A stretch of 64,000 bases of DNA from Podarcis bocagei (taxonomy: Eukaryota), in the NCBI GenBank assembly GCA_964188305.1, contig OZ076903.1, one strand, 5' to 3'. This document shows positions 37,001 to 40,000 of the stretch, one piece after another. A program made the translations under genes and the position numbers. The notes below the pieces were generated by a model. It made no database searches. It was not told where the DNA came from and saw nothing but the letters and a program-made list of their open reading frames with translations. Numbering within the stretch: position 1 is the first letter of the stretch; each line of letters begins with the position of its first letter.

Positions 37001-40000
37001 ACCAATGTAGGCAAGCACCAGCCCTGTACCCAACATCCCCATGGATGCCAGCCCTGTTGCCTGCTACTATCAACTACAAAACGTAAGACTGTCTATTAAG
37101 CCATTTTTTTTGTCATTTTATTCGGGGGGGGGGGGCAACACCTGACAAAATGCCCAATACTTACTGTCCATCTGAGAGGTAGACATTTTTGAGACCACTT
37201 CTACATTGGTATGAAGAACCTCGTCTCCAGCGCTTAAATCTGTGTTCAATTCTTCTAAAACACATGGTATGGCACAAGTTTCTGTTACATTAGTGCAGTC
37301 ATCTTTTTCCAGGTGGCTGAACTCCAATATGTCTTCATGTGCAGACAGTGGACGCTCACTGCTTCCCCGGTGGGCGTCGGTTGTGGACCTTTGCTCTCTG
37401 CCTCCTTCCTGGCCAGCCAGACCCACATGGTCACCGGCCAAGGGGGAATTTCCCTTGGCCATCTCACCCATGGGGGTGTTACCTCCTTGCAAGTAGCCGG
37501 GTTGAAATTCTGTAGCTGAAAGCTGTTGACATTTAGGTACGGAAGTCTGATGCTCTGTGAAAAAGGGGAAAACATGCATTTCGCATTAATTCCTACAAGA
37601 GGAGAAAGGTATTAAGGGAAAGAATGCACATTTTAAAATAAAGGCAAAGGTATACAAAAACCATCTTTGCTGTGAGTCCTGGAAGACCTGCTCTCTCCCT
37701 TGCTAAGATCACTCTGCAGCAGGAACAAAAAATATCTGAGAACAATCACTATTTATAGTTACATTTATATGAAGCCTTAGAGTTCCACAGGCAGAGCTCC
37801 AGAGATTTCTAAATTACAATTCTCTGTCAACCCCCCTTCAGATATTCAGAATGCAAAAATACATGGTCTTCTAAGATACATGGTCTAGCACAAGTTTCTG
37901 TTAAATTAATGCAGTCATATTTATCCAGGTGGCTGAACACCAGACATTAAAAACTTCCTGGTACAGGACTGCCTTCAGATGTCTCCTAAAAGTCAGATAG
38001 TTGTTTATTTCCTTGACATTTGATGGGTGGATGTTCAACAGGGTGGGCACCACTACCGAGAAGGCCCTCTGCATGGTTCCCTGTAGCCTCACTTCTCACA
38101 GTGAGGAAACTGCCAGAAGGCCCTTGGAATTGGACCTCAGTGTCTGGGCTGAACGAAGGGGTGCAGGCGGTCCTTCAGATGTACTATAGATATAGGTATA
38201 CTATAGATCAGGGATGTCCAACTTTGAAAACAAGTTTGTGAACACCTTTTACTTTCCTCCCTAAAAAAAAGCTCAACAACTTTGACCTGATCTCTCCCCC
38301 CCCCCCCCCAGGGTACATCACTGCCAGTTTTTTATTCTGTGAGAAGGTTGCAGTCTCTTGGGAGTTGGGCGTCCCTGTTATAGATCTATAGCTATTCTCC
38401 AAAATATCTCAGCCGTCTCAGATTTGCCTGTCTAGAAAGTCCTACCTGGCCTGCTGAGTTCCAGTACACTTCTGCTCTGACTGGCACAAAGTTCTTGTGG
38501 GGGACAAGATTCCAAATTCTCTGTCTCAGGAGTAATTTTCACTTCAAGGTCTGAAAAAGACATTATCATGAAATTGATAGAATTGTCTTTCTCTGTAGAA
38601 TACAAAGAATGAAAATTGATTATTTTGTTTTTACTATCAACTACAAAACGTAAGACTGTCTATTAAGTCAATTTTTTTGTCATTTCATTCTGTGGGGGAA
38701 AAAACAACAGCTCACAAAATGCCCATTACTCACTGTCCATCTGAGAGGTAGACATTTTTGAGACCACTTCTACACTGGCATGAAGAACCTCGTCTCCAGT
38801 GCTTAAATCTGTGTTCAATTCTTCTAAAACACATGGTCTAGCACAAGTTTCTGTTAAATTAGTGCAGTCATCTTTTTCCAGGTGGCTGAACTCCAATATG
38901 TCTTCATGTGCAGACAATGGACGCTCACCGCTTCCCTGGTGGGCGTCAGTTGTGGATCTTTGCTCTCTGCCTCCTTTCTGGCCAGCCAGACCCACATGGT
39001 CACCAGCCAAGGGGGAATTTCCCTTGGCCGTCTCACCCATGGGGGTGTTACCTCCTTGCAAGTAGTCGGGTTGAAATTCTATACCTGAAAGCTGTTGACA
39101 TTTAGGTACGGAAGTCTGATGCTCTGTGAAAAATGGGAAAACATGCATTTCGCATTAATTCCTACAAGAGGAGAATAATAATAATAATAATAATAATAAT
39201 AATAATAATAATAATAATAATAAATTTTATTTATATCCCGCCCTCCCCAGCTGAAGCTGGGCTCAGGGCGGCTAACAATAAAATGATACAACATTCTAAA
39301 ATCATTTCATTATAAAACTAATTCAAATCAAATTGATGGCAACCATTGGGCTAGAGTTCTGTGAAGATTGCCAAAGGAGGGAGTGAGGCTGTGCCCTAGC
39401 CAAAGGCCTGGTGGAACAGCTCTGTCTTGCAGGCCCTGCAGAAAGATGTCAAGTTCCGCAGGGCCCTAGTCTCTTGTGACAGAGCATTCCACCAGATCGG
39501 AGCCACAGCCAAAAAAGGTACTAAAGAAAAGAATGCACATTTTAAAATAAAGGCAAAGGTATATAAAAACCATCTTTGCTGTGAGTCCTGGAAGACCTGC
39601 TCTCTCCCTTGCAAAATCTGAAGAGAAGCTAAGATCACTCTGCAGCAGGAACAAAAAATATCTGAGAACAATCACTATTTATAGTTACATTTGATTTCTA
39701 AATTACATTTCTCTGTCAACCCTGCTTCAGATATTCAGAATGCAAAAATAAAAAAAGATAATAATAATAATATTTTTATTATTTATACCCTGCCAATCTG
39801 GCTGGGTTTTCCCAGCCACTCTGGGTGGCTTACAGCATATACAGTGGTGCCTCGCAAGACGAAAATAATTCGTTCTGCGAGTCTTTTCGTCTTGCGATGT
39901 TTTTCGTCTTGTGAAGCATGGTCCGTCGCAACTGCGCCTCTTCAAGAAAAAAGCGCAAGACGTTTTCGTCTTGCGAAGCAAGCCCATAGGGAAATTTGTC

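What the first reader, a model, noticed from the sequence alone, without database searches (positions are those of the whole stretch)
37353..37508. ~52 codons inside SHOC1 exon Y appear to come from a dispersed repeat also present at 61607-61763
Seen: 37353-37508 and its duplicate 38922-39077 align at roughly 75-80% by eye with intergenic 61607-61763. The peptides match too: [44 protein letters not shown] versus [44 protein letters not shown]. Homology stops sharply at both ends, and the segment is GC-rich inside an AT-richer exon. From memory of mammalian SHOC1, the flanks align but this segment has no counterpart. Inference: a repeat fragment inserted into the middle of a coding exon, kept the frame, and predates the tandem duplication.
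Basis: partly seen in the sequence, partly recalled or inferred. Interest (0 to 1): 0.7.

Follow-up and report, generated by a model that had tools for sequence, protein, structure and literature searches.

The report
Lizard SHOC1 exon gained noncoding DNA
In wall lizards (Podarcis), one exon of the meiosis gene SHOC1 carries 49 extra translated codons copied from non-coding DNA whose only detectable sibling lies 24 kb upstream, an ordinary kind of lineage-specific insertion and not a fragment of an abundant repeat.

Summary
Window 37352-37508, and its tandem twin at 38921-39077, match 61606-63 at 76-78% identity (blastn E 1.5e-30). Homology stops at both ends, and the piece has 61-65% GC inside a ~40% GC exon.

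The gene is SHOC1 on the minus strand. The exon spans 37165-37554, with a second copy at 38734-39123. Eight non-lacertid squamates lack exactly 49 residues at this site. Podarcis muralis, P. raffonei and P. lilfordi SHOC1 models carry them in both exon copies and in every isoform that includes the exon. Contigs from an RNA-like run cover the whole exon, insert included. So this is a real, in-frame, translated, lineage-specific insertion that predates the exon-module duplication.

The "dispersed repeat" part is not supported:
- Genomic contigs laid at 80% likeness or more give only about one or two extra copies, while nearby SINEs reach about a million-fold depth.
- No other copy exists in the 64-kb window.
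- There is no target-site duplication and no Pfam or Rfam match.

With so few copies, a sibling 24 kb away in the same orientation points to a one-off local copy, made by repair filler or template switching. An old low-copy transposon fragment remains possible. Interest is modest. The scan noted this stretch before, on this same DNA.

The parts
37165..37554 (-). SHOC1 exon Y, downstream copy (b), 390 nt. It starts in phase, with 2 nt completing a split codon.
   Evidence: An acceptor (pyrimidine tract plus cag) lies at 37555-37557 and a donor (gtaag) just below 37165. tblastn with P. muralis SHOC1 residues 476-605 gives 93% identity.
38734..39123 (-). SHOC1 exon Y, upstream copy (a), from the tandem duplication of the X-Y exon module.
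   Evidence: It is 94-96% identical to copy b. tblastn with P. muralis residues 311-441 matches it.
37352..37498 (-). Net 49-codon (147-nt) insertion in exon Y copy b, covering residues G19 to R67 of the exon peptide.
   Evidence: The protein alignment with 8 outgroup squamates shows a gap of exactly 49 columns. This stretch is homologous to the 61.6-kb locus.
37499..37512 (-). 10-14 nt at the 5' junction that still resemble the 61.6-kb locus. They encode F-Q-P, which aligns with the ancestral L-K-T.
   Evidence: Seen. This is either junction microhomology or part of a 157-nt insert that displaced about 10 nt. It remains unresolved.
38921..39067 (-). The same 49-codon insertion in exon Y copy a.
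   Evidence: An RNA-like contig from run X19 lies on 38740-39046 without a break.
61606..61763 (.). Sibling or putative donor copy. It is non-coding, has the same orientation as the exon copies, and lies 13 kb upstream of the SHOC1 start-codon exon (48495-48539).
   Evidence: blastn E 1.5e-30. It has no Pfam, Rfam or Atlas match. CpG observed/expected is 0.51, so it is not a CpG island.
61764..61930 (.). GC-rich continuation of the 61.6-kb patch that has no counterpart in the exon.
   Evidence: Composition profile. It has no blastn match elsewhere in the window.

Best explanation
Shown. In the lineage leading to Podarcis, a piece of non-coding, GC-rich, CpG-depleted DNA became part of SHOC1 exon Y. 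The net gain is 147 nt, or 49 codons, in frame. The site encodes a fast-evolving stretch N-terminal to the XPF-like core of the protein. The segment is transcribed and retained in mRNA. It was later doubled when the X-Y exon module duplicated in tandem, so the protein carries it twice.

Inferred. The inserted DNA was copied once from the locus now at 61.6 kb, or from that locus's ancestor. That locus is 24 kb upstream, in the same orientation, and 13 kb 5' of the start codon. The likely route is a local duplicative repair or replication event: filler DNA at a double-strand break, or a microhomology-mediated template switch. Transposition of an abundant repeat is less likely. The added residues are rich in Gly, Pro and charged amino acids, and most likely just lengthen a tolerant linker. 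Their reading frame is kept open because the essential XPF-like and C-terminal domains lie downstream.
For: Homology and its limits. Gene identity and exon map. The insertion is absent from Rhineura, Hemicordylus, Elgaria, Anolis, Sceloporus, Pantherophis, Paroedura and Tiliqua, and also from Phrynosoma. It is present, ungapped, in both exon copies of P. muralis, P. raffonei and P. lilfordi, in every isoform that holds exon Y.

Transcription: run X19 shows depth on exons and zero in introns. One contig lies on 38740-39046, and a contig of equal depth covers exon X plus 37478-37554. Together they cover the whole exon Y, insert included.

Low copy number: in genomic run X1 the insert bins read 61-97, against 22-37 for single-copy flanks and 36-43 for the duplicated exon flanks. 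SINEs in the same stretch read 10^5-10^6. One extra single-copy contig is seen in both X1 and X17.

With a handful of copies in a genome of roughly 1.5 Gb (size from my own knowledge), a sibling within 25 kb is expected by chance at about 10^-4. No target-site duplication is visible: the outgroup residues flanking the site are not repeated on either side of the insert. The 9-of-10 nt match at the 5' junction lies over codons that are one-step derivatives of the ancestral L-K-T, which would be junction microhomology. According to PMC5962103, human SHOC1 residues 570-1111 hold all predicted XPF functional domains. The exon Y region (about residues 400-480 in orthologs) lies outside them.
Against: The copy-number test only sees copies at least 80% alike, and the two known copies are themselves 76-78% alike. 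An old family of tens to a few hundred diverged copies could therefore be missed. No repeat library (Dfam, Repbase) and no genome-wide search were available. The 22-24% divergence between insert and sibling is large for a direct donor-copy pair, unless the event is tens of millions of years old and CpG decay sped it up. All 9 differences between the two exon copies are transitions, which fits CpG decay but does not prove it. One homology end at the 61.6-kb locus (61606) coincides with a jump in GC content, as the terminus of an inserted element would. The microhomology reading rests on protein alignment only, because no outgroup DNA could be fetched.
Confidence: 0.5

Rival explanations
1. Both the exon insert and the 61.6-kb locus are independent fragments of an old dispersed repeat, that is, a transposable element or its non-autonomous derivative. 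One fragment landed in, or was captured into, the exon.
For: Pairwise identity of 76-78% with a transition:transversion ratio of 2:1 looks like two aged copies of one family. The GC-rich patch at 61606-61930 has a sharp compositional edge exactly at one homology end. Lizard genomes are repeat-rich, and this window holds a LINE and many SINEs. Contig depth leaves room for one or two copies beyond the three seen.
Against: Depth at 80% likeness or more is only about 3-4 copy equivalents, against 10^5-10^6 for true repeats in the same stretch. No other copy occurs in 64 kb. There is no target-site duplication, terminal inverted repeat or tail. There is no Pfam, Rfam or Atlas match. phmmer against 1.8 billion representative proteins found the segment in no protein other than SHOC1. 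A low-copy family would rarely place a second copy 24 kb away by chance.
Confidence: 0.3
2. Reverse direction. The 61.6-kb locus is a short secondary copy of the middle of exon Y, made after the insertion. The true source of the inserted codons is then unknown, for example de novo expansion or a lost donor.
For: With lenient gap costs, blastn stretches the match to 61573-61763 vs 37325-37508. That reaches into codons conserved in all SHOC1 orthologs. The 10-14 nt at the 5' junction may also be ancestral exon sequence.
Against: The 3' extension adds essentially no score and is not better than shuffles (p about 0.29). Both ends of the homology fall within about 10 nt of the ends of the ortholog-absent segment. 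That is not expected for a randomly bounded copy of an exon (roughly 0.25% by chance, my estimate).
Confidence: 0.1
3. Not an insertion. The segment is ancestral and was lost in other squamates, or it is removed from the mature mRNA as an intron.
For: A GT at 37482-37481 and an AG at 37360-37359 could in principle define a 124-nt internal intron (read).
Against: Eight squamates from geckos to snakes, plus the amphisbaenian close to lacertids, lack the segment, so one gain is far more parsimonious. The candidate intron is 124 nt and would shift the frame. RNA-like contigs run through it. No Gnomon isoform drops it alone.
Confidence: 0.04

Closest known systems
Templated or filler-DNA insertions at repaired double-strand breaks, and replication template switching (MMBIR/FoSTeS-type events)
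   Same: A short stretch (about 150 nt) was copied from a nearby site in the same orientation. There is no target-site duplication. Microhomology at one junction is possible. It appears to be a single event and not a family.
   Different: This one is fixed in a lineage, lies inside a coding exon, and is in frame and translated. The junction microhomology is inferred from proteins only. The donor-copy divergence of 22-24% is high.
Exonization or exaptation of transposable-element fragments in coding sequence
   Same: Non-coding, GC-rich DNA that also occurs elsewhere became translated codons in a lineage-specific way.
   Different: Classical exonization recruits an intronic element as a new cassette exon through splice sites. 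Here the DNA sits in the middle of an existing constitutive exon. No transposon identity, hallmarks or multi-copy family could be shown.
Lineage-specific indels in fast-evolving linker regions of meiotic (ZMM) proteins
   Same: The site is the least conserved part of SHOC1: 33-60% identity across squamates here, against 65-85% in the XPF-like region. It lies outside the XPF-like core (PMC5962103). Within Podarcis the insert varies at about the same rate as its flanks (about 25% variable columns).
   Different: A recognisable sibling of the inserted DNA is still present nearby, so the source of the new codons can be traced.

Membership tests
SHOC1 / C9orf84 (Pfam DUF5587, PF17825), host gene | Collinear similarity of the exons to SHOC1 orthologs over the full protein length | tested here: met
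   tblastn with Rhineura (XP_061488183), Sceloporus and P. muralis (XP_028568196) proteins gives collinear hits from 48539 to 9902 on the minus strand. Per-exon identity to P. muralis is mostly 85-100%. The neighbouring exon at 36434-36895 gives a weak DUF5587 hit (E 5e-4, below the cut-off).
Dispersed repeat / transposable element fragment | Many copies scattered through the genome | tested here: not met
   Genomic contigs of two species, laid at 80% likeness or more, give 61-97 over the insert. Single-copy DNA reads 22-37 and the duplicated exon flanks read 36-43. SINEs in the same stretch reach 10^5-10^6. No other copy occurs in the window. Copies below 80% identity are not covered by this test.
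Dispersed repeat / transposable element fragment | Structural hallmarks: target-site duplication, terminal inverted repeats, or a poly-A or microsatellite tail | tested here: not met
   The outgroup residues flanking the site are not duplicated around the insert. No convincing inverted or direct repeats flank 61573-61930.
Dispersed repeat / transposable element fragment | Match to a curated repeat family or to a transposon protein | not testable with these tools
   No Dfam, Repbase or RepeatMasker was available. Pfam on all long ORFs around 61.6 kb, Rfam and the ESM Atlas all came back empty. No LINE remnant lies next to the locus.
Local templated insertion (repair filler or template switch) | The donor lies nearby on the same chromosome and copy number is limited to donor plus insert | tested here: met
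   The sibling lies 24 kb away in the same orientation. Depth is consistent with about three copies in total, counting the two exon copies.
Local templated insertion (repair filler or template switch) | Microhomology between the target site and the donor at the junctions | tested here: inconclusive
   A 9-of-10 nt match at the 5' junction overlies codons F-Q-P, which align with the ancestral L-K-T. The 3' junction is blunt.
Local templated insertion (repair filler or template switch) | The donor locus predates the insertion, that is, it is present in species lacking the insert | not testable with these tools

The most novel reading that the evidence does not exclude
About 150 nt of non-coding DNA from SHOC1's own upstream region was copied into a constitutive coding exon by a microhomology-guided template switch. 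It became 49 translated residues of an essential meiotic crossover protein and was then doubled by exon-module duplication. This would be a traceable birth of new coding sequence with the donor still in place.
Probability: 0.4. Interest if true: 0.45.

Novelty: new member of a known kind. Interest (0 to 1): 0.3.

Why it matters
The finding shows, with the source still visible, how a conserved meiotic recombination protein can gain new residues from non-coding DNA. In Podarcis it gains them twice, because the exon module was later duplicated. If the local templated origin holds, this is a tidy natural example of repair- or replication-driven creation of coding sequence. If the source is an old transposon, it is one more case of exaptation. 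Either way the change sits in the least constrained part of SHOC1 and is probably neutral. Its main value is for annotation and for studies of indel mechanisms and SHOC1 evolution in lacertids.

Tried and rejected
1. phmmer of the exon peptide against 1.84 billion representative proteins. Apart from SHOC1 orthologs, it returned only two bacterial repeat proteins (P0001, P0003) with low-complexity, multi-stretch matches, which I judged spurious.
2. Word search with the exon peptide was blank. It is limited to proteins of 71-226 aa, so the blank says nothing about longer proteins.
3. Word search with Rhineura residues 390-500 found only three iguanian or amphisbaenian proteins. The search over residues 680-1150 was needed to reach Podarcis.
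As a result there is no outgroup DNA, no dating within Lacertidae, and no check of the 61.6-kb ortholog.
5. Rfam on 60800-62600 gave only sub-threshold noise. This rejects a small-RNA pseudogene origin.
6. CpG observed/expected of 0.3-0.5 rejects a CpG-island, promoter or first-exon identity for the 61.6-kb patch. The GTGAGT at its end is also inside the homology, so a spliced-RNA origin is unlikely.
7. The tblastn hit of P. muralis residues 500-577 on 38081-37866 looked like a third insert copy. Beyond the 27-aa Y' fragment it is only a weak extension through a SINE.
8. The search of earlier findings by sequence and by words gave nothing usable.
9. Literature: no paper mentions both SHOC1 and Podarcis.
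Exons were searched one by one by reference, and public full-length orthologs supplied the context.

Full report
**1. The observation.** A self-comparison of the window finds 37352-37508 matching 61606-61763 at 77.8% over 158 columns (E 1.5e-30). The tandem twin, 38921-39055, matches 61606-61740 at 76.3%. All matches are plus-to-plus, so the three copies share one orientation. A global alignment gives 76.4% for exon copy b and 72.7% for copy a against the distal locus, with 25 transitions and 13 transversions. The two exon copies are 94.4% identical, and all nine differences are transitions. An anchored-extension test against 2000 shuffles shows no significant homology beyond either end. With lenient gap costs, blastn stretches the match to 37325, but that extension adds about zero score. 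The solid core is 37352-37488 at about 80%, and the 5' most 24 nt are patchy. GC is 0.62-0.65 in the segment against 0.39-0.45 in the rest of the exon. No further copy exists in the window at E<=1. The window contains no N.

**2. The host gene.** tblastn with Rhineura floridana SHOC1 (P0002), Sceloporus (P0009) and Podarcis muralis (P0137) lays collinear exons from 48539 down to 9902 on the minus strand. The exon next to ours gives a weak DUF5587 Pfam hit.
- Exon Y spans 37165-37554, with a pyrimidine tract and cag acceptor and a gtaag donor.
- Its upstream twin is 38734-39123.
- Per-exon identity to P. muralis is mostly 85-100% (a few partial hits are lower), and exon Y matches none of P. muralis, P. 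raffonei or P. lilfordi exactly (89-95%). The window therefore comes from a Podarcis-like lacertid.
- The 61.6-kb locus lies 13 kb upstream of the start-codon exon (48495-48539).

Exons were searched one at a time by reference.

**3. It is an insertion.** phmmer of the exon peptide against 1.84 billion representative proteins matched orthologs only over residues 69-128, downstream of the segment. An alignment shows one clean 49-column gap in Rhineura, Hemicordylus, Elgaria, Anolis, Sceloporus, Pantherophis, Paroedura and Tiliqua. All eight Podarcis-type copies (four genomes, two exon copies each) fill that gap. Phrynosoma also lacks the segment.
- The net gain is residues G19-R67 of the exon peptide, at window 37352-37498 and 38921-39067. 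That is 147 nt, in frame.
- The nucleotide homology to the distal locus runs 10-14 nt further 5', over codons F-Q-P. These align with the ancestral L-K-T and are single-step derivatives of it.
- So either 157 nt entered and about 10 nt were lost, or 147 nt entered at a site that already shared about 10 nt with the donor.
- No target-site duplication is visible at the protein level.

**4. It is expressed.** Every Gnomon isoform of P. muralis and P. raffonei, and every P. lilfordi model, that contains exon Y aligns ungapped across the segment. The shorter isoforms drop whole exons or the whole 165-aa module.

Run X19 behaves like RNA, with depth on exons and zero in introns. One contig lies unbroken on 38740-39046. 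Pieces of equal depth lie on exon X and on 37478-37554. Together they cover exon Y from acceptor to near the donor. A conceivable internal intron (GT at 37482, AG at 37359; 124 nt) would shift the frame and is not used in these contigs. Caveats: these are assembled contigs from a related organism (coded I), and the run's RNA status is a guess supported only by the exon/intron depth pattern.

**5. Is the source a dispersed repeat?** Genomic contigs of run X1 (probably the same species) and X17 (a congener) were laid at 80% likeness or more.

| Stretch | Depth in X1 |
|---|---|
| Single-copy DNA | 22-37 |
| Duplicated exon flanks | 36-43 |
| Bins over the insert | 61-97 |
| SINE-type repeats in the same 4.8 kb | 10^5-10^6 |

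One additional single-copy contig overlaps the insert in both species. It is probably the 61.6-kb copy. That amounts to roughly three to four copies, two of which are the exon copies themselves.

The distal locus has no Pfam hit in any long ORF, no Rfam match, no Atlas neighbour, no adjacent LINE remnant and no flanking terminal repeats. Its CpG observed/expected is 0.3-0.5, so it is not a promoter island. Its terminal GTGAGT lies inside the homology, which argues against a spliced-RNA origin.

The limitation is that copies below 80% identity would be missed, and the known pair is itself 76-78% alike. An old family of tens to a few hundred members cannot be excluded.

**6. Mechanism.** With at most a handful of copies in a genome of about 1.5 Gb (size from my own knowledge), finding the sibling 24 kb away in the same orientation is very unlikely by chance, on the order of 10^-4. 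Even for a hidden family of 300 copies it would be about 1%.

That proximity, the absence of a target-site duplication and the possible junction microhomology favour a one-off local duplicative insertion, either filler DNA at a repaired break or a replication template switch. The 22-24% divergence then implies an old event, tens of millions of years. It must postdate the split from amphisbaenians and predate the module duplication, whose copies differ by about 5-6%. The all-transition differences between the exon twins suggest CpG decay, which would have accelerated the divergence.

The rivals are an old low-copy transposon fragment (0.3) and a reverse-direction copy from exon to distal site (0.1). 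The reverse-direction model is disfavoured because both homology ends fall within about 10 nt of the insertion boundaries.

**7. Consequence.** The site lies N-terminal to the XPF-like region. According to PMC5962103, human residues 570-1111 hold all predicted XPF functional domains. It is also the least conserved part of SHOC1, at 33-60% identity across squamates. Within Podarcis about 25% of insert columns vary, the same as in the flanking exon. The residues are rich in Gly, Pro and charged amino acids. The likeliest reading is a tolerated lengthening of a flexible linker. The frame stays open because essential domains follow. No function was tested.

**8. Verdict.** The in-frame, translated, pre-duplication insertion is confirmed. 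The "dispersed repeat" origin is not supported, and a local one-off copy is the better explanation at moderate confidence. This is a new member of a known kind of event and of modest interest. The scan had noted the same stretch and the surrounding duplication before, on this same DNA.

Noticed in passing
window 37555-38446 and 39124-40687: Podarcis-type SHOC1 goes straight from exon X to exon Y. The roughly 77-residue segment that Rhineura (aa 325-401), Sceloporus and Phrynosoma have between them has no significant remnant in the window (tblastn at E up to 50). It seems to have been lost in this lineage.
   Followed up: partly
window 37866-37946 (minus strand): This is a partial third copy (Y') of the 3' part of exon Y, 88% identical to 37251-37326. 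It lies in the intron between exon X copy b and exon Y copy b, and it abuts a high-copy SINE. It begins at the position homologous to 38895.
   Followed up: partly
window 38736-38895 joined to 40687-40833 (run X21, record 31): In a congener (organism H), a low-depth contig joins exon X copy a, plus 41 nt of its upstream intron, directly to the 3' part of exon Y. The join starts at the same position as the Y' fragment and skips the insert. This could be a structural variant, a paralogous fragment or an assembly chimera.
   Followed up: no
window 26864-29565 (minus strand): LINE ORF2 remnants with an apurinic-type endonuclease domain and a reverse transcriptase domain (Pfam Exo_endo_phos and RVT_1) lie inside a SHOC1 intron.
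   Followed up: no
window 37945-38390 and 39200-40650: Very high-copy SINE-type repeats lie in the introns of the duplicated module, with summed contig depth of 10^5-10^6 in two species and also in the RNA-like runs. An (AAT)n microsatellite and a SINE (39168-39517, 87% identical to 26362-26710) sit just upstream of the acceptor of exon Y copy a.
   Followed up: no
window 60750-61150: A second GC-rich (0.59-0.67) but CpG-poor patch lies 500 nt from the 61.6-kb locus. Its 119-aa minus-strand ORF has no Pfam match, and the patch has no similarity elsewhere in the window.
   Followed up: partly
window 37440-37470 (minus strand): The exon copies of the insert hold a 9-bp perfect inverted repeat (GGCCAAGGG ... 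CCCTTGGCC) around a GGGAAATTCC core. The palindrome is degraded in the 61.6-kb copy.
   Followed up: no
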